From: Fonticula alba ATCC 38817
Taxonomy: Eukaryota; Protista; Nucleariida
Assembly (NCBI GenBank): GCA_000388065.2
Contig: KB932206.1
Direction: 5' to 3' (one strand)
Length of the DNA stretch: 52,806 bases
Position 1 is the stretch's first letter. Each line of letters starts with the position of its first letter. Shown here in pieces: positions 11,619 to 32,548 of the stretch. The notes under the pieces were generated by a model. The model was not told where the DNA came from. It ran no database searches and worked only from the letters and a program-made list of their open reading frames with translations. A program made the translations under genes and the position numbers.

Positions 11619-11684
11619 CCCCCTCCCCCAAACCTACCTACCCTCTCTCGGTCTTCTCCGGGGAAAAGATCCCGCCCGCCGGTC

Positions 11685-14600: not shown

Positions 14601-14808
14601 CGCTGCGACTTTCTTCTCCCGTCCGGGGCGGTGGGGCGCGTCTGCGCAGACGCCTTCCCCATGAGCGCGATCCACGGTGCGTATGCGGAGAGCTCCCCTT
14701 CTCCCTGTGCGGCGGGGCGGGGCGGGGCCGGTGGGGGTGGGCCGGGCAGCCTCCGGGTGCGATGTGCTAACAGAGCCATGTGTCCCCTCGCGCCGCGGCG
14801 CAGACTGA
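11685..14808 (+). CDS. Type I membrane protein with a long furin-like/CXXC ectodomain and short cytoplasmic tail; predicted exons 11685-14043, 14397-14501, 14650-14676, 14804-14808
   Basis: Signal peptide AAVLSLLLLLALVASVVAA; about 750 aa of CxxC repeats. Donors GTACGC (14044), GTGCGT (14502, 14677); branch-like CTGAC/CTAAC and CAG acceptors (14396, 14649, 14803). Splicing is phase-consistent and gives ...KSSKRRLAIGLGVGLGILALVLVAGAVAAFFILRGRGASANKDAFPMSAIHD*. Confidence 0.9.
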
Positions 14809-15806
14809 GTGCATGTCGCGGGGCCGGGCGTTCGCGCGCCACGCGGCAGGGCCACTTGCCGAGCGAGCGCACATGCGGGGGGGCTCCCCGGGCCGCTGGC
14901 GCTTTTTGTTCCGAATACACTCGCCGCTCGCATGGGCCGCTGCTGTGGTGCTTTTTTTTGGTCGGCAATCCGACAAGAAGACGGTCTCGCGCGCTGAGGC
15001 GACGCGGGGCCAGGGCCGGGGCCGGCCCGTGGTGTGCGGGGGGAGAGCTGCTCGCGGCCATGGGCAGGCGGAGGGAGGGGAGCGGGCACTGCGCCTCGGG
15101 GTCTTTTTCGAGAGGTGTCCCACGGTGCGCCGGAGGGGGGAGGGCCGGCGATGCGGGCCTGTGGGAAGAAGAGAAACCCCCACGGCGGGGGGTGGCGGCG
15201 CGGTGCGCCGTCGTCCGGGCGGATGGCGCCTGGGCTTCGTGTGGTTTTGTTCTTCCTCCTTTGCGCGGCCCAGGGGGGCAGGAGGCCTCGGACCATGGGC
15301 TGGTCTCGCTCCGTCGAGGGGGGGGGGGGGGGGGGGGCAGGGGGAGGGCGAGCAAGAAAGCAGGGCNNNNNNNNNNTGCGCGGCCCAGGGGGGCAGGAGG
15401 CCTCGGACCAGGGGACGGCATCGTGCCGGCGGCCGGCGCACGGCGCCGGGGGCAGGGGGAGGGCGAGCAAGAAAGCAGGGCACCGGGGCCGGCCCGAGGC
15501 GAGGCCCGCCGACCTGGCTGGCGGCCGGGACAGGGCGCGCCCAAGGTGCATGGTCGGCCAGGTGCGCGCCGGCACCCCGGGCGCAGGCGGGCGTGGCCGG
15601 TGCTGCTGGTGCGCCGGCCGCCCCCCGGGCCCGCGAAGCGCATGGCGAGACAGTGTGCCAGGGGGCGGTCCGGCGGCCGGGCTTGCACGCCCCCCCTCCC
15701 GGCGGAGCATGGCCCACGTCCGGGCTGGTGCTCTGGCGGCCGCGAGGATCTTGGCGCGCACGCGCGGCCAGAGAGCCTCCCCAAAAGCGGGGCGAGCAAA
15801 AGGAAA

Positions 15807-15879
15807 TTCCCATACCGGGACTCGAACCCGGGTCTCGTGGGTGAGAGCCACGTATCCTAACCACCTAGACTATATGGGA
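15807..15879 (-). tRNA. tRNA-Glu (CTC)
   Basis: Reverse complement TCCCATATAGTCTAGGTGGTTAGGATACGTGGCTCTCACCCACGAGACCCGGGTTCGAGTCCCGGTATGGGAA; anticodon arm CGTGG-CTCTCAC-CCACG; TTTT downstream. Confidence 0.96.
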
Positions 15880-16710
15880 GGGGTGAGTGATGAGGGCGCA
15901 AGGAGGCCTTTTGTGCCTTCGGCGAGGGGGGCCTCGCTTGCGCCCCCAGGCGCCCCCCACGAAGCAGGTTGGCAAGCGCTCGGTGGGGGGGTGTCCCGGC
16001 AAAAAAAAAAAAAAAAAAAAAAGAAGGGGGGCTGCTATGCCGGACCAGGAACATGACCAAGGAAGGGGCCATAGAAGCGGCGACCGGGCTGCCAGGGGGC
16101 GGCACAGGCCCCACCGGGAGACCCTTTCGCCGGGGGCGTGGAGGGGACTCCTTGCTCGTGGGTGCGGGTGCGCCGGGCGGATGAGGCACTCGGTGAAGGG
16201 GTCGGAGGGGGGGGGGCCGGGCTGGGGGCGACCTGCCTTGGTGATCGACGGCGGGGCGGGGCAGAAGAGACGCCCGGGCGGCGGGCGGCCGATGCGCGGC
16301 TCGGGAACCGGCGAGGGCGCGGCAAGGGCCACCGTGAGGCCCGGTGCCGGGCACCCCCGTCGGGCGAGCCGGCGCCGGAAGATGAGCTGCGCGTGGTTTC
16401 GGAGGGGGAAAGGCAATGCCGAGGCATGGCTATGGTAGGGCATGTTGGCTGATCGGACGCAGAGCGTGCCACTGGGCCGGGCCCGGAGGGGGGGGGGGGG
16501 CATCATGAAGTTGTTGGGCGCAGGCGAGGAGCAGGCCCACCGAGGCCCAAGGGGAGGGCGGCCGGGAGGCAGTGCCGGTATTGTCCCGGGCGGAGGGGGC
16601 GCGATGTGGCGGTGGCCCGGGCTGCTGGTCAAGCGGGGGATGTGTGGCGAGGAAGCGCCGCAGAGCAGGGTGAGCACGTCCGGGGGCCCTGCTGCCGGGG
16701 ACGCATGTGC

Positions 16711-16793
16711 GGCGGGCGGGCGGGCGGGCGGGCGGGCGGGCGGGCGGGCGGGCGGACGGGCGGGCGGACGGGCGGGCGGGCGGGCGGGCGGGC
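16711..16793. repeat. (GGGC)n tetranucleotide repeat with two GGAC variants
   Basis: Direct reading. Confidence 0.93.
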
Positions 16794-19700
16794 GCGGGAT
16801 GCGCCATCCGCGTGGAGGAGACCTGGGCGGCGGCGAATGTGCCCGGGGAAGGGCGCCGCGTTTGACGGCGCCCCGGGGCCTCCGTGGCGGACACCGGATG
16901 CAACCGGGGCCCGAGGCGGCCGGGCACAGCGCCGAGGCGGGCAGCCCGTCGCGGGCCGGGTGAGCGAGCAAGCGCCATGGGGCCCGGGCCATCGGATGAT
17001 GAGGGGCCCGACCGGGGGCGGCCCCGGTGATACTTATGGGGGGCCAGCCCGGAGCTCGGCCGTGCCGGGGACCCGGGGCAGGGCGCCGGCCCTCGGGCCC
17101 ATCGATATCTCGACCACGGAGGGGACCGGGCGGGCCCGAGATCGCCCCCTGGTCGTGGATTCCTTCGGAGGGGGGCCGTCGCCACGCCCAAAGGCCAGGC
17201 CGTACCATGGATCCGCGCAGCAAGAGGCGGAGCGGGGGCCTGCTTCGGGGCGCTCGTTCGCGGCCCGGGACCTGGCGCCGCCTTCGGGCCGGGGAGCCGA
17301 GCCAGCGCCTTTTGGCGGTCTGGGGGCCGGGGCATGGAGGCCCGCGCGCCGGGCGAGGAGGATCCGGAGTGCGGGGGGGGGGGATGCCGCGCGCGTGTCC
17401 GGGCCCCGGGGCGCCGGGGCCCTTCTCGTATGTGTTGCGAGGGCGTCGCGGCGCGGGGATGCCACCGGCCGCTGCCGCATGCCAACGCATGGACCTTGCT
17501 CGCCCGGCGGTCGGGGGGGAATACCGGCGGGAGGGGTGAAAAGGGAGCATTAATATATGCACGGCGGCCGCGGGTGGCTTTTATTTTGGGTGCCTGGTTT
17601 CACCTGTGCCCCTGCTTCCTGCCCCCCCCCCCAGCCCAGGGCTGCGAGCGTCCCCCTGTGGCATGGCCCCCCGGCGCCTTGGGCATTTGTTTCTCGGTCC
17701 TTTCTCTCGCCGGTGCAGAGGCGGCATGGGTGCCACATCTTGACGCCGGGGCCTGGCGCGGCGGGCGGGGAGGGGCCGACGGACAGTGGACGCGCATCGC
17801 GCAAGGGGGCCGCACTGCGGCGCGGGCCCTCCTCCGGCGGGGTGTTGGTTGGTTGGCGACGGCCGGCTGCCGATCCACCCTACCATCCTCGTGCGGTCCC
17901 TCGCCCCCCTCCGCTGGCGGACACCGCCACGCCGGCCCAGCATGCCATTGCGCCTCGGTGCCGGCCCGGGCCCATCGATGGCCCCCGGCCCTTGCTACTC
18001 CAGCGCCGTCTGTTCCCCGCACTCCCCGCGGGCCGGGCCCGCCATTCCCATCGTCGAGGGGCCCATTCCGCGCGCCTGCCGCAAAGTGATTCCCCTCCCC
18101 CGGCTACATCTTCCCACAATCGGCCGAGCCCCGCACTCGGCCCTAGCCAGGCCCGCTCTCCGAGTCCCCTTCTCCCTCCCTGAGTCCCTCTCGCTCTCTG
18201 CAGCCGCTCTTCATGGTGTCGTTTGTTTCGTCGAGGACACCCTCCTGCGGCGGTGTCCCTTTCCCGGTGGACACTGCGGCACATGCCTCCACCATGTGTC
18301 GACCCGGCCGGGCCGACCATTCAACATCCCTCCCCGAACTGGCCAGCCACCCACGAGAGCCCCCTTTCGGCCGGCGGGGCAGCCTTCTTCCCGGTCCACA
18401 AACCCTCCCCGTGGAGGCCCCGGTCTTGGGCACCCTCCGCCCCCTGCATCCTTCCGGGCCACGACACAGCCCGCCCATCTCCTCGCCATCCAGACCACAC
18501 CCTCGGCCTGCCCGTCTGCCCGAGGCCCGCTTCCGCCGGACCACTCGCTCGACCGCCACGTCGAGCCCCGTGCACTCGCTACCTACATCCGCATTCACAT
18601 GGCCCACACGGGCCTCGGCCGGGGGGAGGGGTCCATCCTTCGGAGAGCCGGGCCGCTTCCCCACGCGCCAAAGGCCGGAGCCCCACCACACCCCGGGCCG
18701 TCCCGGAGATCACGACCCCCGCCGAGAGGCTCCGGCCTGCTCGGACGAGGGAAACCCCTTCGCCGGCGAGGACGCAAGGGACCTGCCCAAAGGGCGGGCC
18801 GAGCGTCCAAGCCGACTTCCCGGCATGTGCGCAGCCGCCTGCCCCGTGGTATCCCGGCCGAGGGGCGGCCACAGGGCAGCCGTCGATCGCCCCTTCGCGA
18901 AGACACTCCCCGGAGAACCGCCGGCCCGTGTCTCAGTCCCGGATGTGGCCTCTTGGCCGGGGGCTCCCGAGCACGCTTCCCCGCCACCCCACACCGAGCA
19001 GGCGCCTTCCGCCATGCCGGTATCCAGGAAGCGCGTCGATGCATCCTCGCCTCCGGTCGCGGAGGCAGCGTCGGCAAATCCGCCCGCCGCCCCGTTGGCC
19101 CCGGCGGCGCGGCACCCATCCCCCCTCCCCAGTGCACTCGGCGGCATCTTCCACCACCACAGCCACCGCCGGGCGGCCCATGCTGACGACATTGCACCGC
19201 TCGCCGACCCCAAGGGGGGGGGGGGCACACCGCTGGTGTGCCATCGGCCGATCAACCGGCACACTGGAGCCGGTGCCCGGCCGAGGGTCACTTGCCCCCC
19301 TCCTGCGGCAGCCTCTTCGGAGGCGTCAAGATGGGCCGCGGTCAAGTGGAGGTGCCTCCTCCGGGTGCTTGACCGCGCGCGGGATGTCCCGCCCCCCGCC
19401 CATCGGCGCCTTTGGGTGTGGCGGCCGCATGGGGCTGGTCCACGCTGCTCGCCGCCGAATGTCCCCCTCCGCCCGGGCAGGCGCCACACCGACAGCAAAG
19501 GCAGGCCCACCAGCATGGGCGACACGCTGGCATGGGACGTCAAAGCCGGCGACCACCGCCATGGCGGCTCCTCGCCAAGTACCCGGCTTCAGCCAGTCCT
19601 GTTCATTTGTGCAAATGCCTCGGGCACAGGCATGGGCGCGGGCCTCCTCCCGCCTGCCTCTCCGGCCCCTCGCGGCCCGGCCGGAATCCTTGCCACCCCC

Positions 19701-21554
19701 CCCCCCAGGGACCATGCCCCCACCCGGCGTCTTGTCGCCACTTTCCTCCCCCCCCCCCCCTGACGGCCCGCACGCAAGGGCAAGGCCGATGCCCGGGGCA
19801 CGGACGCGACGCCTTGGCCACCAGCCCGGCTCCCGCTCACTGGGCGGCGCCTCCTCCGCAATGGCCGCTCCGCCGCTGCCTCCGCGGGCCGCTCCCCCTC
19901 GATCCCTGTGTCGGGCTCAGCCTCTCCTGCGCCAGGGCCGATGTCGGTGCCTTTGCAGACCGGCCTGCTCGCCCTCTGGCCGGGGCGGCTGCTCCCTGAC
20001 GCCACGCCGATGGCCCTCGCCTGCTGCCCGAGCACTGACATCGCCCCGCCGAGTGCCGGGGATCCCCGGCCGCCCGGCTCGCTGCTCGCCCGATCCTGCA
20101 GCCCGGCCACTGCATGTCCTCTTGGCGGCGCCCTGATCGCGCCCGGCCCACGGATACCCGTGGCGCGTCGCCCCCCAGCCAGCGAGGCAAGCGCCCACCC
20201 AGACGGCGCCGCCCCCGTGCCGGGGACGGTATCCACCAGCCTCGGGGCAGGCTCGCCTCTCCGGGCCGATCCCCCGGCCGAGCTTCCCCCGCGTGGCCTG
20301 CCGCACATCCGGCCGCTCAGCATACCCCGACGTGGGCAGCAAGTAAGTCCGAGAGTGGCGCCCCCCTTCCCCACGCACCAGTCGTAAAACCTTCACCCTA
20401 GACCCTGCCGGCCTGCGCGGCCGCAATGGCAACATCCGGATCCCGGAGCCCCTCGGCATGGGATCCGCCCTTCCCTGGCGCCCGGCACCCTGGCCGGCAC
20501 ACAGCAGCGATGGAGCCCCCACCGCCGCCGCCGCCGCCGCCGCCCGAGAGCAGCCTCCCAGCCCAAGGCCTATGAGCGGCCGCTCGTGCCACCCGGGGCT
20601 GTGGTGCCTTCGCCGCAGCCCCCACGGTCCCGCGCGGCCCGACGACCCTCCAAGGCCCGGGCAGTGGTGGGCACCTTCTCGCGCGACATCGCACCATCCC
20701 CCCTGGCGCCTCTCGGGCCCATGACCCGGGCACCGCCCCCATCCGGGCCAAGCAATGAACGCATGCTCGACTCGGCCCTGTGGCGCGATGGCCCCCGCAA
20801 AAGGCGCAGCCCTCGCCTCCCGGTCGCCCGCCGCTGGCAGCCCGACGGCCTGGCCGGAGGAGCCCCCGCAAGCAGGTGCAATGGCCATGCCCCGCGATCG
20901 ACCCCCCGCCCNNNNNNNNNNNNNNNNNNNNNNNNNNNNNNNNNNNNNNNNNNNNNNNNNNNNNNNNNNNNNNNNNNNNNNNNNNNNNNNNNNNNNNNNN
21001 NNNNNNNNNNNNNNNNNNNNNNNNNNNNNNNNNNNNNNNNNNNNNNNNNNNNNNNNNNNNNNNNNNNNNNNNNNNNNNNNNNNNNNNNNNNNNNNNNNNN
21101 NNNNNNNNNNNNNNNNNNNNNNNNNNNNNNNNNNNNNNNNNNNNNNNNNNNNNNNNNNNNNNNNNNNNNNNNNNNNNNNNNNNNNNNNNNNNNNNNNNNN
21201 NNNNNNNNNNNNNNNNNNNNNNNNNNNNNNNNNNNNNNNNNNNNNNNNNNNNNNNNNNNNNNNNNNNNNNNNNNNNNNNNNNNNNNNNNNNNNNNNNNNN
21301 NNNNNNNNNNNNNNNNNNNNNNNNNNNNNNNNNNNNNNNNNNNNNNNNNNNNNNNNNNNNNNNNNNNNNNNNNNNNNNNNNNNNNCCCTGGCTCGTGCAC
21401 GGTGCCTCCCGGAGTCCCAAGTGCGAGGGCCCCTCCACCCGACCGCCCGGGTCGAGCGGGTCATCTTTCCTCCCTTTCTCTTCTCTTCTCTCTCTCTCCC
21501 TCTGTCTCTCTTTCTTCTTCACTCCCCTCTGTCCGGCCCCTTCGGCGTATTTTG

Positions 21555-23639
21555 ATGTTGGCTTCAAGGGCAACCGGGCGAGCTCTGCGCGCGTGGGGCT
21601 CGCCGGCACTGGCGGCGGCGGCGGCCCGGTGGGGCTGGCCTCTGCCCAGGCGCGACACGCCGGCCCCCGGGGGCCCGGCAGCCCCGGCGTCCGGGCCCAT
21701 GGCAGCCCCGGCCATGGGCATGGGGCGTCCGTGCGTGCGGGGGTTCTCCTCGGCCGGGGCGGCGCCTGGCCCGGGCGATGGCCCGTGCGCCGGGGAGCGC
21801 CTCTGCCGGGCCATCGAGGCCGGGAGGGAGCCCCTGCCGCAGGGGTTCGATGATGTGGCCCACTTCCGGCTGTTCTTGCGGCTGGTGGGAGATCCGCGGG
21901 AGGGTCGCCCGCTGGCGCCCTTGGGCACGCTGGGCCGGCTGCTGGGCATGGACCGGTCATCGGTGCAGGCGCTGCTGAGCCAGTATGGCCGGGAGTTTGG
22001 CATTGCGCCGGCCAAGCGGCCGCTGTCCCTCTTCCCGGAGCAGGTGGTGGGCCCGGGGGATCCGATCTTCGAGGATATGATGGGGCTGATTCGGCGGGAC
22101 CCGCCGGTGCTGGGGGCCGCCCTGTCGCGGCTGCTGTGCCTGCTGCCGAGGCAGGTGGAGGGCCTGCTGGCGGAGCATGCGGCGGAGATCCTGGACGAGG
22201 CGGAGCGCGACCAGGGGGTGTGCATTCGCCGGCTGGGCCACCTGGTGACCGTGGCGCCGCCCCTGTCGAAGCAAACCATGGCCACGCTCCTTTCGACCAG
22301 CCTGCTGCAACTGACGGCGGCCATGAGAAGGCACTTCCCGGAGCATGGGGTGATGGTGGTGCCGAAGGCGTCGCCGGCCAAGCTGGAGGCCCTGCGGGCC
22401 GTCCTGGCCGACAGGACACGGGTGCCGGTCCCGCGGCTGGCGGAGATCTGCACGCTGGCGGACGTGTGCATATCCACCGTCGCGACGCACGGGCCGACCC
22501 TGTGCCCGGAGTATGTGGTCCGTCTGCGGGGCGAGCTGTCGCCGAAGAAGGTGGCCCGCTTGCGGGCACTGCTGCGAGAGCAATGCCACAGCATCAGGGC
22601 CATGAGCAGGGATTTGGGGCAGCCGGCGCGGTATCTTCGCTGGTACATCAAGTACTATGAGCCGGGGGTGGTGTTGCCTGCGGGCAATGACCAGCCGGTG
22701 TATGTGCTGGCGCTGCCGGACAGCTCGACCCGGCTGACGCTGGCCGAGTATATGCGGCGGTTTTTGCCGGCCGCCTCGCCGCTGCACGGGACCCGGGATG
22801 AGGACATCCCGGCCCGAGCGGCCAATTGGATGCCCGGGACCGTGGCCGATGACGGCGCGTCGGAGTCGGACGCCGAGGCGCCGGCGGCCCCGGGCCCGGA
22901 GCCGGGCCCGGGGCCGCCGGCGCGGATGTCGGTGCAGGAGCGGAACCAGGCGCTGGAGGTCCGGCTGCAAGGGCTGTGCGGGCTGCGGCCGGCGCTGTCG
23001 CCGGCGGAGGTGCTGGAGCAGATGGGCATCCCTTGGGTGCACATTGACAGGGCGCTGGCCTCCTTCGAGTGGCCGAAGGACCTCTGGGATGCCCGTCGGC
23101 GGTTGGCCAGCCGGGCGCCCTCGGACGAGGGGATCCGGCGGCTGCGGCAGCTGGCGAGCCAGGTGCACCCGTCGGGCCGGCGCATGCGCCATACGGTGCG
23201 GGAATTGGCCGCCGAGCTGGGCCAGGAGCCGGATGTGGTGTTCACCATGCTGCACCAGTATGCGCCGGAGTACTTCTTCCTGGCGGTGGCGCCGGAGGCC
23301 AAGTCCGGCCTGGGGGGGATCTACGTGCCGGAGGAGAAGCTGGCCGACCTGCTGGCGGCGGTGCATGGCCGGCACCCGGCGCCGGTGCTGCACCAGGTGG
23401 CGGCGGATCTGGGCTGCACCCTGCCGCAGGTGGTGAACTCGCTGCGGGCGGACGCCTTTCAGCGGGGCATCCAATTCAAGGCGCCAAGCTACGCGCGGCA
23501 CCTGGCTTCGCGGACCTTTCAGGTGGAGCAGGTGCTGGCCCTGTACCCCGGCATGCAGGCTGCCCACATGTGTTCCATGTTCAGGGATCTGCTCCCCCAC
23601 CACTTCTACCGGTGCCAGCGCTACATCGTGTCCCAGTGA
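21555..23639 (+). CDS. Orphan ~694-aa protein with a putative mitochondrial presequence and about 8 repeated HTH-like units
   Basis: Continuous ORF from ATG 21555 to TGA 23639 with protein-like composition and strong GC3 bias. Arg/Ala-rich, nearly acid-free N-terminus ending ...CVRGFSS. Repeated motifs such as TVRELAAELGQEPDVVFTML and VLHQVAADLGCTLPQVVNSL. Confidence 0.85.
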   Translation: MLASRATGRALRAWGSPALAAAAARWGWPLPRRDTPAPGGPAAPASGPMAAPAMGMGRPCVRGFSSAGAAPGPGDGPCAGERLCRAIEAGREPLPQGFDDVAHFRLFLRLVGDPREGRPLAPLGTLGRLLGMDRSSVQALLSQYGREFGIAPAKRPLSLFPEQVVGPGDPIFEDMMGLIRRDPPVLGAALSRLLCLLPRQVEGLLAEHAAEILDEAERDQGVCIRRLGHLVTVAPPLSKQTMATLLSTSLLQLTAAMRRHFPEHGVMVVPKASPAKLEALRAVLADRTRVPVPRLAEICTLADVCISTVATHGPTLCPEYVVRLRGELSPKKVARLRALLREQCHSIRAMSRDLGQPARYLRWYIKYYEPGVVLPAGNDQPVYVLALPDSSTRLTLAEYMRRFLPAASPLHGTRDEDIPARAANWMPGTVADDGASESDAEAPAAPGPEPGPGPPARMSVQERNQALEVRLQGLCGLRPALSPAEVLEQMGIPWVHIDRALASFEWPKDLWDARRRLASRAPSDEGIRRLRQLASQVHPSGRRMRHTVRELAAELGQEPDVVFTMLHQYAPEYFFLAVAPEAKSGLGGIYVPEEKLADLLAAVHGRHPAPVLHQVAADLGCTLPQVVNSLRADAFQRGIQFKAPSYARHLASRTFQVEQVLALYPGMQAAHMCSMFRDLLPHHFYRCQRYIVSQ

Positions 23640-26600
23640 ATACACATACCCGCGCGGGGATGGGTGNNNNNNNNNNNNNNNNNNNNNNNNNNNNNNNNNN
23701 NNNNNNNNNNNNNNNNNNNNNNNNNNNNNNNNNNNNNNNNNNNNNNNNNNNNNNNNNNNNNNNNNNNNNNNNNNNNNNNNNNNNNNNNNNNNNNNNNNNN
23801 NNNNNNNNNNNNNNNNNNNNNNNNNNNNNNNNNNNNNNNNNNNNNNNNNNNNNNNNNNNNNNNNNNNNNNNNNNNNNNNNNNNNNNNNNNNNNNNNNNNN
23901 NNNNNNNNNNNNNNNNNNNNNNNNNNNNNNNNNNNNNNNNNNNNNNNNNNNNNNNNNNNNNNNNNNNNNNNNNNNNNNNNNNNNNNNNNNNNNNNNNNNN
24001 NNNNNNNNNNNNNNNNNNNNNNNNNNNNNNNNNNNNNNNNNNNNNNNNNNNNNNNNNNNNNNNNNNNNNNNNNNNNNNNNNNNNNNNNNNNNNNNNNNNN
24101 NNNNNNNNNNNNNNNNNNNNNNNNNNNNNNNNNNNNNNNNNNNNNNNNNNNNNNNNNNNNNNNNNNNNNNNNNNNNNNNNNNNNNNNNNNNNNNNNNNNN
24201 NTGGGCATGGCAATGGGGGTGTCGGGAGCCGGCGCCGGTGCGGCCGGCGCAGGGGCATGCGGCTGGCCGGTGCAGGGGTGTGCGCATGAGCGCCACTACC
24301 GGGACACCGGTGCAGTCCGGCACCGGCAGGGGCAGACGGATCGGCCCGTGGCCATCGGCTAAGGGGGTGCACCTCCCACGGGGGGGACTGTTGCCCGGCG
24401 GGGACGCGCGGCTGTGGTGGCTGCGAGAGGGCCCGCGTGGCGGTGGCCACGTTGTTTACTTGTCCCCCCCACTGATGTAGGCCGTGCCCACCGATCTCCC
24501 GTGGGGATCGTGCCGGCGGGGGCCATCTCGGCCGTGCGCAGGAGTGTCTTTTTTTGTCTCTCCCGACCATGCGCGCGCCCCGCGGCAGTGGTGGCTGTGC
24601 GTGTGGGCGCGGCCGCGGGGGTGTGGCAGGCGGCGAGGCACCCTGCGCCCGGAGCATGTGGCCCCTCGGGGCGTGGCTCTCGCGGCCGGCCGGGCTGGCC
24701 CTGTCTTTGTCGTTGTGCTTGGGTCTTGCCAGCGGGGCGCGCATGGCGCCGTTGCCGTGGGGGATGCGCGAGGCGCCTGGAGGGGGAGGGGCTTCGAAGC
24801 AGGGACACTGCCAAGGTCGGAAGAGGCAAGGGAGAGCCGAGCGGGCGGAGGCGAGGGACGCATCGAGCGGATGCCGGAGGCCCTCCGCTGGCGAGAGGGG
24901 CCGTCGATGTGCGCGCCGGGGGCCACAGGCGTCGAGGGCACCTGGCATCACCACCACCACCACCACCGCTCGGGGGAGTCGACGCCGGGCTGGCTGGCGT
25001 GCCCGATGGTGTGGGGCATTTCCGTATCGGTGACTGGACTGCCCCAAGCACGGCAGGGGAAAGTCCCGCCATCACCGCGGGGGATGGTGTTCCTGCGCCT
25101 TCGCCGGCGGGACACGGTGTGCGTGGGGTAAGCCGGTCGGGGTGCGGGCAGGCCAGACGCGCCAGCCTGGCCGGTCGAGCGCCGCGGCCATGACGATCGC
25201 CCTCCGCGCTCGCATAGCCAGTCGGCACGGCGCATGGAGCCCCTGTGTGACTGGGGGGGGTGGGGGTGCTGGCGGGCGGCTCGGTGCGGTGGACACCGCC
25301 GAAGCCCACGGCAGGGCGGGGTGGGGACCCTTGCGCGGCCATGTGCTCGAGGCGGGGGCAGGGCCTTTCGGCTGCGGGCGAGGGCACCGAGCAGATGGCC
25401 CCAGGGATGGCCTCTCAGGCCCTGTGCGTGAAAAGGCCCGCGGGGGATGGCCAAGTTGTGTGTGTGTGTGTGTGTGCTCTGCGCGGCCGCCAGCCGGGCG
25501 GCTGCCGGTGGCCGTCGCAGGCGTCCTCGGTCTTCGGAGGCCGTCAGCCCCCCATATCACCGGGCTTCGCCGGGGGCCGACTGCCGGGCGCCGGGCGGGC
25601 CGATGGGTGGCGGCGCATGGCGGCGTGCGGCTCGGCTCGCTCGACGCACTCACGCCACTCGGCCCCGTTGCGGCCGCCGGGGCAGGTCACAGGACGCGAG
25701 TACCGTGCGGCGTGCCAGGCGGAGGGGGCGAGGTGGAGGGCATTGCCTTAAAGCGCCCGGGGGACTGCCGGTTGGAGTATTCTTCCCGGGCGGTGGGGCA
25801 TCCTGGCCCGGGGGCCTGCCGCCGATCGCAGGGTCCATTACGATGGCGCGACGCGGGGCAGCCCGGAGGAGGCCATCGGGAGAGAAGAAAAAAAGGCAAA
25901 ACCGGCCTGCGGGATTGCGGCACACGTCGCCGGTGGCACGGGCGTCGGGGCGCCCGGGGGGACAGGTGAACCAAGCGTACGGAGCATGGGAGGCACCCCG
26001 CCGACGGCCGGTCCCCACTGGGACCATGTCCCCCGGGGCGTGCTTGCACATCCGCCGGCCGTTTGTTCGATCGCGCGCAGGGGCTGTGTCGCCATTTCCG
26101 GGCGGCCCCGGGATGCGGTGGACAGTCGGTGTCTTGCCTGCCGCCGGCGGTCCGGCCAGGCGGGGCGCCTTTGGACGAGCCGGGCCCCGGGCAGCGGCGG
26201 CATACGGCCCGGCAGTGTGGCTGCACGATGCGTCCCCTCGGCCGGCGTGGCGGCGTGGCTCGATGAAGGGGGGGTCTGGCGCGATGGCAAGCACCCGCTC
26301 GACAGATCCGACCGTGATCCGGGGGCGGAGCGATCGTGATGGGCAAGGCTTGGGGGGCTTTCGCCGTCTGAATGGCAGCCAGGCCGTGGGCAGGCAGCGG
26401 ACAGCGGAGGCACCGCTGTGCGGCACCAGCCCCGGGCGGGCGGGCGGGCGAGGGCAGCGCGGTTATCCGAGTCAGGAGGGAGGGGGGAGCATCGGGAGAT
26501 CCCGAACGGAGGCAGGGGCTGCCCGTGGGAGGGACAGGCACACAGGGATGTGGCTTTTTCCTTGGGCCCTTCGCCAGTGGGCCTGGCCTGGCGGGCCGCC

Positions 26601-28990
26601 GGCCTGCTGGCACCGACGCCACCGCCGGTGCGAGTGCCGGCCTGCCGCACTGGGGCGTGGGCACATGCTATCCCCGGGGCATGCCCCGGGCGGCGGTGCG
26701 GGGTAATGCGTCCGGGTGGGCCGGGCCCCGGCGCGCCGCCCCGCTTGCCGGGGTGGGCATGGGGGGGGACGGGGGGCGGCTTGCGGGGTCCCCCGGGGAT
26801 GGGTGGCGAGCCGGGAGAATGGCGCCGGCGGGAATGCGACAGTGCAAGCAAAAGCGTTCGGCCGCGGCGCCGGGACGGCAAGGGGGAAGGCGCGCGAGAA
26901 TGCGCGGGGCGCTGCCTTCCGGAGAAGGTGGCCCCGATGAGGGACGCGCCGAACATTGCGGGCCTCCGTGCCGGAGCGGCCGAGGCCATGGCGAAGCCTG
27001 TGTGTGTGTATGGGCGTTTCTGTGCGTACGCATGCATACATGTGTATGTGTATATAGCACGCCCCGGCGCCTGGCGGAGGACGTTGGGGCACCGCTTTCG
27101 GCCTTGGAGGCGATGGCGCTGATGCAGGCGCCGGGCGGCGCTCGGGGCAGGCTCCCGGTCTCGTCCACTGCGGCGGGCGGGTGCGTTGCGCGGGCTTCGC
27201 GCTGCGGGTGCGACCGAGAGGTCCCCCGGCACCGGAGATGCCCCCGCTCCCACCGGGCCATGGGCTGACGCTTGTAGGTGTGTCCAAAGTCCGACCGGAG
27301 GGCCCCTAGGGGCCGGGCGCCGGCATGCCTCGGGATGCATGCACCCTGCTCGCTCGGTGTGGCTGCCCTGCCTGCCTGGGGGGTACCCCTGGGAGGCGGC
27401 GCCCCGTATGGCATGATGGGCAGAGCGGCCACACGGAGCGAGCAGGAGGGTGGGGGATGTGGCTATTGCAGGCTCTGGGCGCTGGCAAGTGGCCCTTCGG
27501 GACCAGCATAGCGCCCTGGGGGGCGAGCGCGTCCCGGAGGGGGGCGGCACCGGGCGGGCAGGCGAACGACCGACAGACACCGGGCAGGGGGCGAGGCCCG
27601 GCGCGCATCAAGCGAGTGACCATCCTCCCCGGTGCCGGCGCCCGGGAGGGGGGAGGGGGCAGAGAAGAAAGCGCCCGGCTCGGGGGCACCCAGGGGAGAG
27701 GAGGTGCGCGGAGGAGGTCCACAAGAGAGGAGCTACACGGGGGAAAGCAAAAAGGAGGGTGCCGGGTGGAGGGCGCCCCGTGTGGACACACAGGCAATCA
27801 CCTCGCTGGAAGATCATCGGAAGGGACGGGCCCCTCGCGGGCGGCGAAGCGGCGGCAGAGCCGATCGAGGCCCCGGGGCGGGGGGGGGAGGTGGCCAGCG
27901 CGAGTTCCCACCGGGCGGGGCCCGGCGCAACCAGGCCCACCGGCGCGCGGCGGTCTCTCGTCGACGAGCCTGCCAAGTGGGCCAATCTGGAGGAGCGCCA
28001 GGGGGAACTGCCGGTGCATGTGGCATGTGCCTCGCCCGCGGGCGGGCGCCATGCGCGCCTGCCGGGGTGTCCCGCCTGGCGCGTGGGGGAGGGGGCCGGG
28101 GGGGGGGGCTCGCGCAAAGGCCAGGGAGGATGCTGGTGCCGACGCCCGTGAGGCAGCCGCCCGCCTGTCGCCCGTTGCACAGCCCTGCCCGGCGGAGGTG
28201 GCACTCGCCCATGTTGCCGGGGGGGGGGGGGGGGGGTGTACTTCGGGCCGGTGAGGCGCTTGAATGTGCTGCCGGTGGACGTCGGCCCTGGGGCACGGCA
28301 AATGCACGTCCTCGCGTGGGGCACCTTGCGTGGCTCCGGTTCGGGCGCGCCGCCAGTGCAACAGGCACGGGGCACCCCCGCCGCCCGTCGAATGTGACCG
28401 CGGGCAGGCCTGCACGGCCCCCGGGCAGCCGCATCCCAAGAGGCGCATGCGATCAGCAGGCGGGAGGGTCCACCCGCTGCAGCGGCGGGCACCCATCATG
28501 TCGCCCGGCAGCCTTCATGCGGGGGGCCGTGGCAGCCGCCTGGGCACAAGTGAAGACACCGAAGAGGGACTTGATACCGGACGGGCGCGAGACGCTGGAG
28601 CCACGCTCGGGGCCGTGCGAGGGGCAGATGGGACTTTCGGAGGCCAGGCGTCGGGGGGGGGGGGGCCGGCTCGGCGATGCCTGCTCGGGCTGGGCATCCG
28701 CCGCCGGGGCCTCCGACGCCCGGGGTTCCCCGGCGGCCGAGATCCATGGACGTCGGGCAGAGTGTGGGCATCCGGCGGGGCCAGGGATCCTCGGGGCTCC
28801 GGGCGATCAAGCGGCCGGCCGGGTGGGCCGATGCGGGCTTCCTCCTGCACGGGTGTGGCTAGTCCTTGTGACATGGCACGTGTGGGTGCGTTGCGCGCCG
28901 GGCCGACGCCGGCCCCACGAGTTGGGGGGGGGGGNNNNNNNNNNNNNNNNNNNNNNNNNNNNNNNNNNNNNNNNNNNNNNNNNNNNNNNN

Positions 28991-29024
28991 TTCTTGGACA
29001 GTGAGGAGGTCATACTGGTATAGA
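28991..29024. repeat. 34-bp direct repeat, copy 1 (abuts an N gap)
   Basis: TTCTTGGACAGTGAGGAGGTCATACTGGTATAGA is identical to 32888-32921. Confidence 0.9.
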
Positions 29025-30533
29025 GGGGCAACGAGACAGCCGGCCTTACAAGAAGGGAGGGTGGCTCGCGGGCCAGACAGCAGCGAGGCGACACGGACAC
29101 ATGGCAAAGGTCGCGGCTGGTCTCGGAGCCCCGTGGCTCATCCGAACAGCGGCCAGGCTCGCAGGCGCATGGGGCGTGGCTGGCTGGGGCCGGCCGGCGG
29201 CCGCCGTGCAGATGGGCAAAAGCGCCGCCGGACCACGGCATCTCGGGCCACGAGCCAGCACCTGCGGCCCGTGTGCCAGGGAGTACGTGCTGCTCGGTGG
29301 GTGGATGACGTCCGCCGCACAGAGGCTCCGCATATTTTCGGGAGAGAGGAGTCTCGGGCCAGGCCGGCCGAAAGGCGCGGACGCGGGGAGCCATGGGCAA
29401 TGGGCGACTAGGGGAGTTGGGCAGCATGAGAGGCCTTGGAACTGCATGGCCAGGCGGAATGCCTGGCACAGCCACCGCAGCGTGCTCCCTGGAGGAGGCC
29501 GGGGCCTGCCCTCGCGAACCATGTGGGAGGGGGGGCTCGCTCTCTCGGGCGCGGTGGGTTCCTGACGCCGCGGCGAAAAGTCAGCTTGAAAAAGAAAACA
29601 CGGCCGAAGGAGTTGCCTGAGTGCCGGAACAACGCTCCGGATGGACCCCGCGGTGGTGGGCAACCGGGGTGCACCATTCGCCCGTCCGCTGGGAGCTCCC
29701 CGCGCAATGGCGACGGTCGGGGGCCACTTGGAGGGGGCCGGACCGTGGAACCGAAGCATGAACATCGCCCGGGGGGCGTGTTTCCTGGCGAAGGGCCTTG
29801 CAGTGGCTGGTACGTCCTGGGTCCGGGGAGACTGGGCACGGGGCGCATTTTTCGAGCACCCCCCTCCCCTCAGGGTCGGATACCAGTAGACGGGGTCAAC
29901 GAGACAGCCTGGCCGCTGGGCTCAAAGGTAGTTCGTCGTGAGGTCGGGCCGGGAGGGAGGCGGATTGGCAGGAAATGAGCATGCCGGACGAGGGGACGGC
30001 AAGGGGGCTTTCGGGCCCGTAGGGAGGCCCCCCGGTGGTGGCCGCCGGCATTGNNNNNNNNNNNNNNNNNNNNNNNNNNNNNNNNNNNNNNNNNNNNNNN
30101 NNNNNNNNNNNNNNNNNNNNNNNNNNNNNNNNNNNNNNNNNNNNNNNNNNNNNNNNNNNNNNNNNNNNNNNNNNNNNNNNNNNNNNNNNNNNNNNNNNNN
30201 NNNNNNNNNNNNNNNNNNNNNNNNNNNNNNNNNNNNNNNNNNNNNNNNNNNNNNNNNNNNNNNNNNNNNNNNNNNNNNNNNNNNNNNNNNNNNNNNNNNN
30301 NNNNNNNNNNNNNNNNNNNNNNNNNNNNNNNNNNNNNNNNNNNNNNNNNNNNNNNNNNNNNNNNNNNNNNNNNNNNNNNNNNNNNNNNNNNNNNNNNNNN
30401 NNNNNNNNNNNNNNNNNNNNNNNNNNNNNNNNNNNNNNNNNNNNNNNNNNNNNNNNNNNNNNNNNNNNNNNNNNNNNNNNNNNNNNNNNNNNNNNNNNNN
30501 NNNNNNNNNNNNNNNNNNNNNNNNNNNNNNNNN

Positions 30534-31675
30534 AACACCAGCCGAGGGCACATTTCGTTAGGGACAACCACACCACGGTGGCAGCACTACAGGAGCCATT
30601 TCTTCCGTCGGATGTCAGTGGACAAGTGCTGGTCGGAGATGGCCAGCCGGGTGTCACACGAGTGGCTGGTAGTGGCAGGGCTCTCCCGGACCCAGTCGTG
30701 TGCCAAAGAGACAAAGCTTCGACGAAGGTGCATCCCGGATAATTGCCATTGGAAAGAGGGTACTCCGGCCATGAAGAACCAGCCTCCCGAGCCAGAGAAT
30801 ATGCTGCCGCGCGTTTCCACAGGAGTCTGTAACTTGGCTCGAAGGGAGTTTGCGGCAGGCAAACATGGCAAGAACTTTGAAAATAAAGAGGGGTTCCAGG
30901 GAGAACCTGAGAACAGGTATCCACAAACTTGACTGGTACTCCAACAAAACAATGGCATACGCTTCCACACGCGGCTACAAGGGCCTTCACTCACCAGAGG
31001 CTCCCACGAAGGAGTTTTCACTTTCGGGCAAGATCAAGGGGTAGATTTGCGAACCAGACGACTGGGCCCTTCCACTCGTTTATCAACGTCGAGAGTGTAG
31101 ACCGCTCGATCCTGGCAGCTGAGTGGGTTGATGTCTCCGCTGGGGCTCATGACGATATAAACATCATTCAAGTATTGACCGCCTCACGGGTTCTGTCTCT
31201 GCGGCCTGTGACTCATGTAGTGACTCCATTTATCGGTTAGCTGGGGTCTTCGCCGTGTGGGTGCAACCACAGACGTTGTTTGGACATTTGGAGCGACCAT
31301 TTCATTGTAGTAAGGAGTCTTCTCGGGGAAGCCATCGGGCAGGCGATTACCTGCCAAGGCTTGCAGTCACAGGCGAACGGCCCCCATGGGCTTTGTGGAA
31401 CATTGGATGCAAGTGTGAGAATGTATCATGTAGATAATAAGGGGTATTTTGCTGTCGGTTTACTGAGAGACTGCTCCTGTATTTTTGCCCTGGATGACGG
31501 CCAACAGAGCTATTCGCTGCCTAGCTTGGCGGCTAATGCCAATCTTCGGATGAACTGGCCAGGGTGCTCAACGCGGGGTGGCTCACTGGTGCATTGGGTG
31601 GGCATGTTTACCTTCCTGGTGCCCGACCTTCCGCGAATTGTGCTGATCGTATTTCTTACCTGGATGAATACTTGA
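30534..31675 (+). pseudogene. WD40/beta-propeller-like remnant (frameshifted, or spliced in a way I cannot resolve)
   Basis: Collinear plus-strand motifs in different frames: GQVLVGDGQPG, VSAGAHDDINIIQV, LCGTLDASVRMYHV (31391-31432), YFAVGLLRDCSCIFALDDG (31445-31501), separated by stops. Confidence 0.5.
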
Positions 31676-32509
31676 GTGTTTACTGGGCCTGCGCGACTGA
31701 GCGCATGGGAATGGGATGCTGTTAGCACGTCTCTCGGGTCCCCTCCCCCCACGGCATGGGAGACGGGCGTCTGCGAGAGGAGGCATCTTCCCCTGGCAAC
31801 CTACTCTTATAGCTGAACGCACGGGGGGGGGGGGGGGGGGCTCTTACCCAGGTGGTTCTGCGCAGGGGGGCAGCTCGAAGAACAGTCATCTAGTTCGACG
31901 ACCCCCGTACTTTGCCCAACCAACGAGCAGTTGTAAGTGGGGGTATCCAGCGAAGAGGTGAATCTGCGTTGGGTGAGATGTACGCAACTCCGGCAAAAGT
32001 GTTGTAGCCCAATAAGTGCGATTCGACCTCATTCGGAGTCAATCCACCCGAGCCTAGGCAACTGCACAGACCCCTGAAGAGGGTCGGCTCTCTTTATTCC
32101 TCCCCATCTGCAGGGTGTAAAATGCGCGCGGGAGCCAGCACGTGGGAGGACTGCCCCTTGGCTAGAAATGCCCCTGGAAGGGGGCACTTACTTTGCTAGT
32201 GTGGAGTGCACGAACTTTCTCGCGAAAAAAGAAGCTCATGGGATAGTGCGGGTCCCTGAAGTCATGGCTAAGACGGCCCTGACCAAGGTCTGAATGAAGG
32301 CACAAGGCGATCTCTTCCTTGGCGGCATTCCGTCGTACTGCCTAGGTCCACGGTACGTCCGACCTGCGCTGCTCGAGTGGTTAACGCATCGAGTTGACAT
32401 GAGGAAAGAGTCCTTCTTCCACGTTTCATCGCTCTGTCTGGCCCCCTCTCCTTTTATCTTCTATTCTCCAGCCCTTTCGTCCACGCAACAGGCCAGACGC
32501 CTTCCTCCA

Positions 32510-32548
<39 letters not shown>

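What the first reader, a model, noticed from the sequence alone, without database searches (positions are those of the whole stretch)
21555..23639. Orphan protein with a mitochondrial-type presequence and about 8 tandem HTH-like units
Seen: recurring units such as LGTLGRLLGMDRSSVQALL, AALSRLLCLLPRQVEGLL, QTMATLLSTSLLQLTAAM, VPRLAEICTLADVCISTV, SIRAMSRDLGQPARYLRWYI, SPAEVLEQMGIPWVHIDRAL, TVRELAAELGQEPDVVFTML and VLHQVAADLGCTLPQVVNSL. Several are preceded by a helix like SPAKLEALRAVL, SPKKVARLRALL, SDEGIRRLRQLA or PEEKLADLLAAV, giving a three-helix (homeodomain-like) HTH repeat. The N-terminus MLASRATGRALRAW...VRGFSS resembles an MPP-cleaved presequence. I recognise no known family with this architecture. 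Inference: a lineage-specific organellar nucleic-acid-binding repeat protein (nucleoid, transcription or RNA maturation), analogous to PPR/mTERF but built from HTH modules.
Basis: partly seen in the sequence, partly recalled or inferred. Interest (0 to 1): 0.72.

Follow-up and report, generated by a model that had tools for sequence, protein, structure and literature searches.

The report
Fonticula tandem HTH-array protein family
This intron-free, apparently transcribed gene of the amoeba Fonticula alba encodes nine small DNA-binding-type helix-turn-helix modules in a row behind a leader that looks like a mitochondrial import signal; it is one of about 25 copies of an undescribed family seen only in this species, and what it binds and where it works are untested.

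Summary
Window 21555-23639 (+) is an intact 694-codon ORF, and every quoted peptide is present.

**HTH repeat: supported by four lines.**
- Profile self-alignment shows a repeat of about 55-65 residues.
- AlphaFold2 gives nine three-helix units. The full model has pLDDT 74; units 4-5 alone reach 91.
- Structural neighbours are almost all HTH, Myb or homeodomain folds.
- A unit profile hits solved HTH domains, and paralogs hit Pfam HTH families.

**Not a lone orphan.** The genome (Fonticula alba) holds 48 matches at about 26 loci. At least 13 are near full length (33-56% identity), and half lie within 10 kb of a contig end. An exhaustive profile search of 1.84 billion proteins found the family only in Fonticula.

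**Expression.** Contigs of four 2012 runs cover only the ORF, not its flanks, which suggests transcription.

**Mitochondrial leader: plausible, unproven.** The N-terminus is basic and nearly acid-free, and ends in R-G-F-S-S. Real mitochondrial proteins of this genome show R-x-F-[AT]-[TS] in their leaders. A non-leader relative carries an internal RAFSS, which weakens the motif argument.

Nucleic-acid binding is inferred from fold only. This scan already reported the same family from other pieces of this genome, with the same conclusions.

The parts
21465..21535 (+). CT-rich tract just upstream of the start codon (5' region)
   Evidence: Read directly. Similar CT-rich stretches lie upstream of paralogs and of unrelated genes, so it is a general feature of this genome.
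21521..23653 (+). Extent covered by contigs of four 2012 runs (probable transcript, minimum extent)
   Evidence: contigs lie only on 21521-23653. There is none on the non-N flanks 19800-20911 and 24202-25500. Each run has only 11-12 Mb of contigs against a 31.3 Mb genome.
21555..23639 (+). Intronless ORF, 694 codons plus stop
   Evidence: GC3 0.85 vs GC2 0.58, one of only two long ORFs in the window with a clear coding signature.
21555..21749 (+). Presequence-like leader, residues 1-65
   Evidence: 8 Arg, 1 acidic residue, pI 12. pLDDT about 30. Twelve paralog N-termini start ML/MF and have no acidic residue for 33-94 residues.
21738..21752 (+). R62-G-F-S-S66, candidate MPP/Icp55 processing motif
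   Evidence: R-x-[FL]-S-S sits at the same aligned place in 6 of 12 diverse paralogs and 8 of 9 close N-termini; the ninth has R-E-F-S-S. Controls: an MPP-beta-like protein has ARMFATQ and MnSOD has RRAFTSG.
21780..21854 (+). Conserved N-terminal cap, residues 76-100
   Evidence: Mean column identity 0.78-0.81 across 14 paralogs. Helix 79-88.
21855..21998 (+). HTH unit 1 (residues 101-148)
   Evidence: Helices 101-111, 123-130, 134-148. Unit-profile match.
22041..22187 (+). HTH unit 2 (residues 163-211)
   Evidence: Helices 170-179, 187-194, 198-208. Unit-profile match.
22188..22346 (+). HTH unit 3 (residues 212-264)
   Evidence: Helices 224-230, 239-245, 250-260. Unit-profile match. Third helix variable among paralogs, 0.44.
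22365..22514 (+). HTH unit 4 (residues 271-320)
   Evidence: Helices 274-285, 295-302, 306-316. In the two-unit model, pLDDT 91.4 and pTM 0.82.
22521..22667 (+). HTH unit 5 (residues 323-371), the most basic unit
   Evidence: Helices 330-342, 347-354, 358-368. pI 10.6. Superposes on the Tc3 transposase HTH 1tc3/1u78 (Z 5.3, rmsd 2.2 A, 47 residues, 23% identity) and on Myb, SANT and homeodomains.
22668..22925 (+). Linker, residues 372-457: a conserved stretch, then a disordered acidic/Pro-rich stretch (424-458)
   Evidence: Column identity 0.60 for 373-423 and 0.49 for 424-459. pLDDT below 50 for 424-458. pI 4.05 for 424-459.
22926..23075 (+). HTH unit 6 (residues 458-507), variable
   Evidence: Helices 460-475, 483-490, 494-503. 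Conservation 0.47/0.46/0.29.
23112..23273 (+). HTH unit 7 (residues 520-573)
   Evidence: Helices 524-534, 548-555, 559-569. Weak Pfam HTH_32 match at 510-559.
23262..23330 (+). Most conserved block of the family, residues 570-592 (P-E-Y-F-F-L-A ... G-x-G-G-x-Y-V-P-E)
   Evidence: Column identity 0.90. Invariant and near-invariant columns 571-592.
23316..23462 (+). HTH unit 8 (residues 588-636), nearly invariant among paralogs
   Evidence: Helices 593-603, 612-619, 623-637. Conservation 0.78/0.91/0.77. Short shared contigs here have 10-20 times the depth of the unique parts.
23502..23618 (+). Ninth three-helix unit (residues 650-688), seen by structure only, variable
   Evidence: Helices 650-663, 669-674, 681-688. 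Conservation 0.54/0.31/0.27. hhalign aligns 469-690 with 173-367 at 72%.

Best explanation
The gene is one apparently transcribed, intronless member of a Fonticula alba-specific multigene family with about 25 loci. The family evolves by duplication and decay, mostly near contig ends.

The product has four parts:
- a basic leader of about 65 residues;
- a conserved cap;
- five tri-helical HTH modules;
- a partly disordered linker followed by four more HTH modules.

Most likely mechanism (inferred, not shown):
1. The leader takes the protein into mitochondria.
2. The leader is cut at R62-G|F-S by the processing peptidase.
3. The rigidly packed HTH array then binds mitochondrial DNA or RNA in a modular way.
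4. The near-invariant parts (cap, unit 1, units 7-8, block 570-592) give a common anchor or partner contact.
5. The variable units (3, 4, 6, 9) give each paralog its own target.

Shown here: the ORF, the family, the repeat and the HTH fold. Probable: transcription. Inferred: import, processing site, nucleic-acid binding and division of labour among units.

My odds: HTH-array family 0.9; mitochondrial 0.5-0.55; binds nucleic acid 0.6.
For: **Family**
- 48 matches in the organism's own genome, at least 13 of them near full length at 33-56% identity.
- All sequence hits with E below 1e-20 are Fonticula alba proteins.

**Repeat and fold**
- hhalign self-hits.
- Nine three-helix units in AlphaFold2. 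The units 4-5 model has pLDDT 91.4 and pTM 0.82.
- VIA top rows are mostly HTH, Myb, SANT, homeodomain or winged-helix domains. They include Tc3 transposase (Z 5.3, rmsd 2.2 A, 23% identity) and the RecQ C-terminal double HTH (Z 5.9, 99 residues).
- ESM Atlas best matches are HTH_40 double HTH clusters, TM 0.55-0.56 over 93-94 residues.
- The unit profile hits solved HTH domains: 9sgv_A at 8e-6, the TtgV HTH at 3e-5, 2g7u at 2e-4.
- Of 14 members, 5 hit HTH_32, 5 hit HTH_23 and 5 hit HTH_24. Of the 19 Pfam families hit, 18 are HTH-type; the exception is the weak EAD1 match.
- Distant profile hits are multi-HTH proteins.

**Expression**
- Contigs of four runs cover 21521-23653 only.

**Leader**
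- Composition, and a hydrophobic moment of 0.74-0.81, in the top 1-10% of shuffles for three of four copies.
- R-x-F-S-S is conserved inside an otherwise variable region.
- The same type of motif occurs in the leaders of an MPP-beta-like protein and of MnSOD in this genome.
- The contigs include the leader codons and start 34 nt upstream of the first ATG.

**Mosaic of conserved and variable units:**
Against: - No localisation predictor or experiment was available.
- Substitutions in codons 1-25 of nine copies are spread evenly over codon positions (136/144/150). The leader sequence itself is under little amino-acid constraint.
- The related array protein H696_00212 has an acidic N-terminus and an internal T-R-A-F-S-S just before its last three units. 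RAFSS therefore need not be a cleavage site.
- The mature protein is only mildly basic (pI 8.7). Units 2, 6 and 8 are acidic or neutral, and several third helices carry few basic or polar residues.
- All structural matches have Z of 6.1 or less and no Foldseek E below 0.1, as expected for 50-residue domains but not decisive.
- The runs are labelled RNA only by a guess.
- Nei-Gojobori dN/dS of 0.54-0.93 shows weak constraint, though extreme GC3 bias depresses dS.
Confidence: 0.5

Rival explanations
1. It is a nuclear DNA-binding protein family (transcription, chromatin or chromosome-end binding). The basic leader is a disordered tail or nuclear/nucleolar signal, and R-x-F-S-S is a basophilic kinase-type site (R-x-x-S) rather than a processing site.
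For: - The HTH fold is typical of nuclear DNA binders such as Myb, homeodomain and CENP-B.
- The related array protein H696_00212 has no leader, a K-R-P-R stretch and an internal RAFSS.
- Copies are concentrated near contig ends.
Against: - There is no Lys/Arg cluster of the classic nuclear-signal type in the leader.
- All 12 N-termini start ML/MF and lack acidic residues for 33-94 residues, the usual look of import presequences.
- Mitochondrial proteins of the same genome show the same motif type.
- No telomere repeats were seen at the contig ends that were read.
Confidence: 0.25
2. It is a remnant of a mobile element: the DNA-binding part of a Tc1/IS630-like transposase that multiplied and is now decaying, with no cellular role.
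For: - The best single-unit match includes the Tc3 transposase HTH.
- Paralogs hit HTH_32 and HTH_23, and distant hits include IS630-type and TniQ-linked HTH arrays.
- The family is multicopy, with fragments and copies carrying stop codons.
- dN/dS is high.
Against: - There is no DDE or other catalytic domain in any member.
- The 10 kb on either side of this copy share no DNA with the other loci apart from one 99-bp match to L024.
- Paralogs are 33-56% identical, yet at least 12 stay in one frame over 600-700 codons, with invariant blocks.
- The gene is covered by run contigs that are most likely RNA.
- Published estimates give Fonticula only 0.36% repeats (bioRxiv 10.64898/2026.06.24.734286).
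Confidence: 0.1
3. The HTH modules are worn-out structural bricks. The array is a protein-protein scaffold and binds no nucleic acid.
For: - Overall charge is mild, several units are neutral or acidic, and some third helices are poor in basic residues.
- The most conserved pieces (block 570-592, unit 8) look like partner-contact surfaces.
- There are weak matches to the adaptor domain EAD1.
Against: - Unit 5 is strongly basic, pI 10.6.
- The sequence profiles still match working DNA-binding HTH domains.
- The EAD1 matches are below Pfam's cut-off.
Confidence: 0.12

Closest known systems
Tc1/mariner and IS630 transposase bipartite HTH domains (Tc3 1tc3/1u78), CENP-B, paired domain
   Same: The units are tri-helical HTH modules of about 50 residues, joined in tandem. 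Unit 5 superposes on the Tc3 HTH (Z 5.3, rmsd 2.2 A, 23% identity). Paralogs hit HTH_32 and HTH_23.
   Different: Nine units instead of two. There is no DDE domain, there are no transposon ends, and the protein has a leader.
RecQ-type helicase C-terminal double HTH (Pfam HTH_40; PDB 3iuo)
   Same: This is the best match for the packing of two successive units: TM 0.55-0.56 over 93-94 residues and Z 5.9 over 99 residues.
   Different: There is no helicase or HRDC domain. Sequence identity is 8%. It is bacterial.
Myb R2R3, Cdc5/Cef1 and DUX4 double homeodomains
   Same: Tandem three-helix DNA-binding modules in eukaryotes. Two-unit alignments cover 84-96 residues.
   Different: The relative orientation of units differs (rmsd 6-8 A). 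The Trp-spaced Myb signature is absent. These have two or three units, not nine.
Bacterial multi-HTH arrays (TniQ-HTH proteins; a 661-aa protein with ten IS630-type HTH stretches) and Sulfolobus Cbp1 (2lvs)
   Same: These are long strings of simple HTH units. They are the only non-Fonticula hits of the exhaustive profile search. Cbp1 is the top Foldseek row.
   Different: They are prokaryotic. E-values of 1e-14 to 1e-4 are spread over several repeats, so the similarity is generic to HTH units. They lack the leader, the cap and the 570-592 block.
Fonticula H696_00212 (P0023) and other Fonticula HTH-array loci
   Same: The unit signature is the same: a helix, a Pro-rich loop, I-A-x-x-L-G, then a third helix ending in P-E-Y.
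   Different: It has 10-12 units, an acidic N-terminus without a leader, is single copy, and lacks the cap and the 570-592 block.
mTERF, PPR, OPR and HPR organellar repeat proteins
   Same: The likeness is functional only. All are nuclear-encoded, lineage-expanded, modular helical-repeat proteins with import leaders. Plant Rf-like PPR genes also evolve fast in clusters.
   Different: The repeat is different: 52-60-residue three-helix HTH units against 30-38-residue helical hairpins. There is no Pfam match. Organellar location is unproven here.

Membership tests
Tri-helical HTH superfamily (Pfam clan HTH) | Three-helix core with a short second helix, a tight turn and a longer third (recognition) helix | tested here: met
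   Nine such units appear in the full model. The units 4-5 model has pLDDT 91.4. VIA top rows are mostly HTH-type domains, with rmsd 1.5-3 A over 44-50 residues.
Tri-helical HTH superfamily (Pfam clan HTH) | Sequence-profile similarity to recognised HTH families | tested here: met
   The unit profile hits solved HTH domains at E 8e-6 to 2e-4. Of 14 members, 5 match HTH_32, 5 match HTH_23 and 5 match HTH_24, with best E 3e-6. The window copy alone stays below every Pfam cut-off.
Tri-helical HTH superfamily (Pfam clan HTH) | Binds DNA (or RNA) through the third helix | not testable with these tools
   Only charge could be computed: mature pI 8.7, unit 5 pI 10.6, units 2, 6 and 8 neutral or acidic.
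Tc1/mariner or IS630 transposase | DDE/DDD catalytic domain after the HTH domains | tested here: not met
   No catalytic-domain match in the window protein or in 14 members. The whole length is taken up by leader, HTH units and linker.
Tc1/mariner or IS630 transposase | Copies bounded by shared terminal repeats | tested here: not met
   The 10-kb flanks of this copy have no DNA similarity to 27 other loci, apart from one 99-bp match to L024. N gaps at 20912-21385 and 23667-24201 hide part of the near flanks.
mTERF | Match to PF02536 and repeats of about 30 residues | tested here: not met
   No match at E up to 1. The repeat period here is 52-65 residues.
PPR/OPR/HPR | 35-38-residue helical-hairpin repeats with family profiles | tested here: not met
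   No Pfam match. The units have three helices.
Mitochondrial presequence proteins | N-terminal leader rich in Arg, Ala, Ser and Thr, free of acidic residues, able to form an amphipathic helix | tested here: met
   Maximum hydrophobic moment is 0.74-0.81 in three of four copies (top 1-10% of shuffles) and 0.46 in the fourth.
Mitochondrial presequence proteins | Processing motif with Arg at -2/-3 (R-x-[FYL]-[SA], as known from yeast N-terminal proteomics; from my own knowledge) | tested here: inconclusive
   R62-G-F-S-S is conserved among paralogs and mirrored in the MPP-beta-like and MnSOD leaders. An internal RAFSS in H696_00212 shows that the motif also occurs outside leaders.
Mitochondrial presequence proteins | Demonstrated import into mitochondria | not testable with these tools
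   No localisation data or predictor was available.

The most novel reading that the evidence does not exclude
The family is a new class of organellar, modular nucleic-acid-reading repeat proteins built from HTH modules rather than helical hairpins. It arose independently in the Fonticula lineage. It evolves by birth and death near chromosome ends in the way plant Rf-like PPR genes do, which would point to nuclear-mitochondrial conflict or paralog-specific control of mitochondrial transcripts or DNA.
Probability: 0.3. Interest if true: 0.8.

Novelty: new variant of a known kind. Interest (0 to 1): 0.5.

Why it matters
Expanded families of modular repeat proteins (PPR, mTERF, OPR, HPR, TALE, PUF) are how cells read specific DNA or RNA sequences, and several have become programmable tools. 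All known organellar ones are built from helical hairpins.

A eukaryotic family of eight- to nine-unit HTH arrays with import-type leaders would show that the commonest DNA-binding fold can be used the same way. It would give a handle on mitochondrial gene expression in Fonticula, a key relative of fungi for which almost nothing is known.

If the leader is not an import signal, the family is still an unusual, fast-evolving set of multi-HTH DNA binders concentrated near contig ends.

Tried and rejected
- **Direct family and structure searches.** Pfam on the window protein gave nothing over cut-off: weak EAD1, HTH_32, HVO_A0114 and DUF5955. A PDB sequence search with the single protein was blank.
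- **Foldseek.** Against PDB, neither the full model nor the two-unit model gave a match with E of 0.001 or below. The row lists are useful only as a qualitative picture of tandem HTH proteins.
- **ESM Atlas.** The search by features gave no usable hit; the search by structure gave TM of 0.21 or less for the Atlas's own poor model.
- **Word-based homolog searches.** For the window protein this returned Fonticula only. For H696_00212 it returned only itself.
- **Contig look-ups.** The look-up of encoding contigs held no record for the window's genome.
- **dN/dS.** Nei-Gojobori gave 0.54-0.93. I do not use it as evidence of positive selection, because GC3 of about 85% depresses dS.
- **Codon-position test on the leader.** It showed no third-position excess, so it neither proves nor disproves translation of the leader.
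- **Mitochondrial controls.** Citrate synthase, aconitase, MDH, OSCP and GrpE were unusable because introns or gaps hide their N-termini. Only the MPP-beta-like protein and MnSOD could be read.
- **Mitochondrial contig.** Only 4.3 kb around cox1 was seen, at 29-34% GC.
- **Literature.** Searches found no description of this family.
- **Transposon reading.** Rejected for lack of a catalytic domain and of shared ends.
Full report
**1. The object**

Window 21555-23639 (+) is an uninterrupted ORF of 694 codons. It is one of only two long ORFs in the window with a clear coding signature: GC3 0.85 against GC2 0.58. The overlapping long ORFs on other frames are the usual by-product of about 70% GC.

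The gene sits between two runs of N, at 20912-21385 and 23667-24201. A CT-rich tract at 21465-21535 precedes it.

**2. Organism and family**

The window is contig 6, 2433380-2486185, of a 31.3-Mb assembly in 214 contigs. The only database relatives carry the name Fonticula alba.

The protein is not a lone orphan:
- A six-frame search of the organism's own genome gives 48 matches at about 26 loci.
- At least 13 are near full length, at 33-56% amino-acid identity.
- Several are cut by contig ends or gaps.
- Several are decayed, for instance an in-frame TAG in the copy at L016 and TGA in two others.
- Copies stand in tandem on contigs 14, 15, 16 and 17.
- Of 26 loci with a known position, 13 lie within 10 kb of a contig end, against at most 13.7% expected (binomial P = 1e-5).

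No telomere repeats were seen at the ends I read. 'Subtelomeric' is therefore a guess, and the ends may partly be caused by the repeats themselves.

The 10 kb on either side of this copy share no DNA with the other loci, apart from one 99-bp match to L024. The unit of duplication is therefore the gene, not a larger element.

**3. Absence of relatives elsewhere**

I ran a profile of 14 paralogs against 1.84 billion representative proteins. It found 30 hits.
- All hits with E below 1e-20 are Fonticula proteins.
- The next hit is another Fonticula protein, H696_00212 (900 aa, E 1e-19, seven matched stretches).
- After that come bacterial or metagenomic proteins that Pfam shows to be strings of HTH domains. 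Some are fused to TniQ, and one has ten IS630-type HTH stretches.

These distant hits show what the unit is. They do not show orthology.

**4. The repeat**

- Aligning the paralog profile to itself with hhalign gives off-diagonal alignments. The best are 119-310 on 183-362 (probability 96.6%, E 6e-10), 291-371 on 479-572 (89%) and 226-320 on 470-573 (83%).
- AlphaFold2 with the paralog alignment gives mean pLDDT 73.7. Residues 1-75 and 424-458 are disordered, and the rest is mostly at 80-93.
- The model contains nine units of helix (10-15 residues), helix (7-8), helix (10-15). Five precede the linker and four follow it.
- Units 4-5 folded alone give pLDDT 91.4 and pTM 0.82, so neighbouring units pack rigidly.
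- Aligning 18 units from this protein and from H696_00212 gives a shared signature: first helix, Pro-rich loop, I-A-x-x-L-G, third helix, then P-E-Y.
- This 52-position profile recognises units in paralogs that were not used to build it. It also finds five or six further loci in the genome, on contigs 1, 3, 4, 7 and others.

**5. Is the unit an HTH?**

Foldseek gives no significant match for either model. That is expected for 50-residue domains strung together. Its top rows are still tandem HTH proteins: Cbp1, DUX4, Cef1, CENP-B, SelB and topoisomerase V.

VIA-align against 48,161 chains gives Z 5-6:
- Unit 5 lies on the Tc3 transposase HTH (rmsd 2.2 A over 47 residues, 23% identity), the GcrA DNA-binding domain, c-Myb repeats 1 and 2, SANT domains and homeodomains.
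- Both units together lie on the RecQ C-terminal domain 3iuo (99 residues), on R2R3 Myb and on DUX4.

Z values of this size are common for small helical domains, so the weight lies in the near-uniform nature of the list.

Further support:
- The ESM Atlas search agrees. The best matches are HTH_40 double HTH clusters (TM 0.55-0.56 over 93-94 residues), followed by resolvase and transposase HTH domains.
- At the sequence level, the unit profile hits solved HTH domains at E 8e-6, 3e-5 and 2e-4.
- Of 14 members, five each match HTH_32, HTH_23 and HTH_24. Eighteen of the 19 Pfam families hit are HTH-type; the exception is the weak EAD1 match.

The fold claim stands.

**6. Expression**

Four runs from 2012 (one study, two samples) hold the gene. 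They are labelled RNA only by a guess. Two observations argue for transcript assemblies:
- Each run has 11-12 Mb of contigs against a 31.3-Mb genome.
- Contigs lie on 21521-23653 only, at depth 13-18 for the unique pieces. There is nothing on the non-N flanks 19800-20911 and 24202-25500.

The contigs start 34 nt before the first ATG and include the leader codons.

Short contigs of 32-60 nt on the most conserved stretches (23258-23289 and 23387-23446) have depth 186-325. That fits many paralogs being present in the same libraries. Strand and transcript ends cannot be read from contigs.

**7. The leader**

For an import signal:
- Residues 1-65 hold 8 Arg and 1 acidic residue, pI 12, and are modelled as disordered.
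- Twelve paralog N-termini all begin ML or MF and are Arg-rich. Their first acidic residue falls at position 34-95.
- R-x-[FL]-S-S sits at the same aligned place in 6 of 12 diverse paralogs and in 8 of 9 close copies. The ninth has R-E-F-S-S. The motif lies inside an otherwise variable stretch.
- From my own knowledge, R-x-(F/Y/L)-(S/A) is the classic motif for the matrix processing peptidase followed by Icp55.
- As a control, I read the leaders of mitochondrial proteins of the same genome where introns allowed. An MPP-beta-like protein has A-R-M-F-A-T-Q, and MnSOD has R-R-A-F-T-S-G upstream of its mature start.
- The maximum hydrophobic moment is 0.74-0.81 for three of four copies, in the top 1-10% of shuffles.

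Against it:
- Substitutions in codons 1-25 are even over codon positions, 136/144/150.
- H696_00212 has an acidic N-terminus and an internal T-R-A-F-S-S before its last three units.

I put mitochondrial import at 0.5-0.55.

The NCBI models of four paralogs start at a downstream Met and drop the leader (compare). That would hide this feature from proteome-wide predictions.

**8. Pattern of conservation**

Mean column identity across 14 paralogs:

| Region | Identity |
|---|---|
| Cap | 0.78-0.81 |
| Unit 1, first helix | 0.80 |
| Unit 7 | 0.66-0.69 |
| Block 570-592 | 0.90 |
| Unit 8 | 0.77-0.91 |
| Unit 3, third helix | 0.44 |
| Unit 4, second helix | 0.37 |
| Unit 6, third helix | 0.29 |
| Unit 9, second and third helices | 0.27-0.31 |

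This mosaic fits a common anchor plus paralog-specific modules, but it does not prove it.

The mature protein is mildly basic (pI 8.7). Unit 5 is strongly basic (10.6), and units 2, 6 and 8 are acidic or neutral. Not every unit is likely to touch nucleic acid.

Nei-Gojobori dN/dS between paralogs is 0.54-0.93. Extreme GC3 bias depresses dS, so this shows only that constraint is weak outside the conserved blocks. Constraint is better shown by at least 12 copies staying in one frame over 600-700 codons with invariant blocks.

**9. Reading**

The best-supported statement is that this is a member of an undescribed, species-restricted, expanded family of nine-unit HTH arrays, most likely expressed. 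The mechanism I think most likely is import into mitochondria and modular binding of mitochondrial DNA or RNA. Mitochondrial DNA here is AT-rich, 29-34% GC around cox1 on contig 211.

The rivals are a nuclear DNA binder, a transposase remnant and a protein scaffold. They are weighed in the fields above.

**10. Relation to earlier notes of this scan**

Searches of the scan's notes show that other windows of this same genome were already reported as members of this family. Their conclusions were the same: a Fonticula-only family of 15-30 genes built from HTH modules, with the mitochondrial role unproven. They are not independent evidence, and I reached the points above from my own calls.

New here, as far as those summaries show:
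- the control with real mitochondrial leaders;
- the internal RAFSS in H696_00212;
- the contig-end statistic;
- the map of conserved and variable units;
- the match of unit pairs to the HTH_40 / RecQ C-terminal double HTH.

**11. Limits**

- There were no raw RNA reads, no localisation predictor and no access to model coordinates or predicted aligned errors.
- N gaps hide the near flanks.

Noticed in passing
window 5703-7112 (-): The only other ORF in the window with a strong coding signature (GC3 0.91) encodes a subtilase: Peptidase_S8, E 1e-41.
   Followed up: partly
window 1-1125 (-) and 11685-14570 (+); L013:2-1138: These are Cys-rich ORFs with Giardia VSP, furin-like and growth-factor-receptor-type repeats. 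A similar gene lies beside two other copies of the HTH family on contig 14. The two families may share end-of-contig neighbourhoods.
   Followed up: partly
P0023 = G000:C1:980435-982852 (-): H696_00212 is a single-copy 900-aa protein with 10-12 HTH units of the same P-E-Y-tailed type. It has an acidic N-terminus, a K-R-P-R stretch and an internal T-R-A-F-S-S. It has no relatives outside Fonticula in the word search.
   Followed up: partly
G000:C1:3642301-3643770, C4:210649-211431, C3:1885192-1886025, C7:21641-22957: Further loci with two to four matches to the unit profile lie outside the family studied here. One sits in a 1,655-codon open frame.
   Followed up: no
L002, L003, L004, L009 (paralog N-termini): Public gene models of four paralogs (P0002, P0003, P0004, P0007) start at a downstream Met. 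The open frame and an upstream ATG would add a leader of 45-65 residues like the one in the window copy.
   Followed up: partly
L016:3168-5282 (+): This is a decayed paralog with one in-frame TAG. Its linker carries a long Ala/Ser/Pro/Thr tandem insertion made of repeated A-P-A-S-type units.
   Followed up: no
window 22867-22912 and 22108: One run contig skips 44 nt (GG..GG, not an intron-like border, not a multiple of three). One contig reads G for T at 22108. Several contigs run on into unlike sequence. These are probably assembly mixing among paralogs.
   Followed up: no
window 1-10000, 14001-18000, 24001-30000, 38001-42000: Long stretches at 63-75% GC have strong positive GC skew (+0.16 to +0.26) and few ORFs with a coding signature. 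Their nature was not studied.
   Followed up: no
window 30001-36000: The reported GC drops to 0.43-0.54, against 0.63-0.75 elsewhere. Part of the drop in 30001-32000 comes from an N block at 30054-30533 that counts as non-GC. An ORF at 34323-35267 (+) has a low-GC coding signature and no Pfam match over cut-off.
   Followed up: no
G000:C211 (L046): The mitochondrial cox1 lies on contig 211 at 11396-12739 (-). The DNA around it is 29-34% GC, against about 65-70% for nuclear DNA.
   Followed up: partly
window protein residues 523-619: There is a weak match to Effector-associated domain 1 (PF19955, E 0.011, below cut-off). It is also seen in one other member.
   Followed up: no
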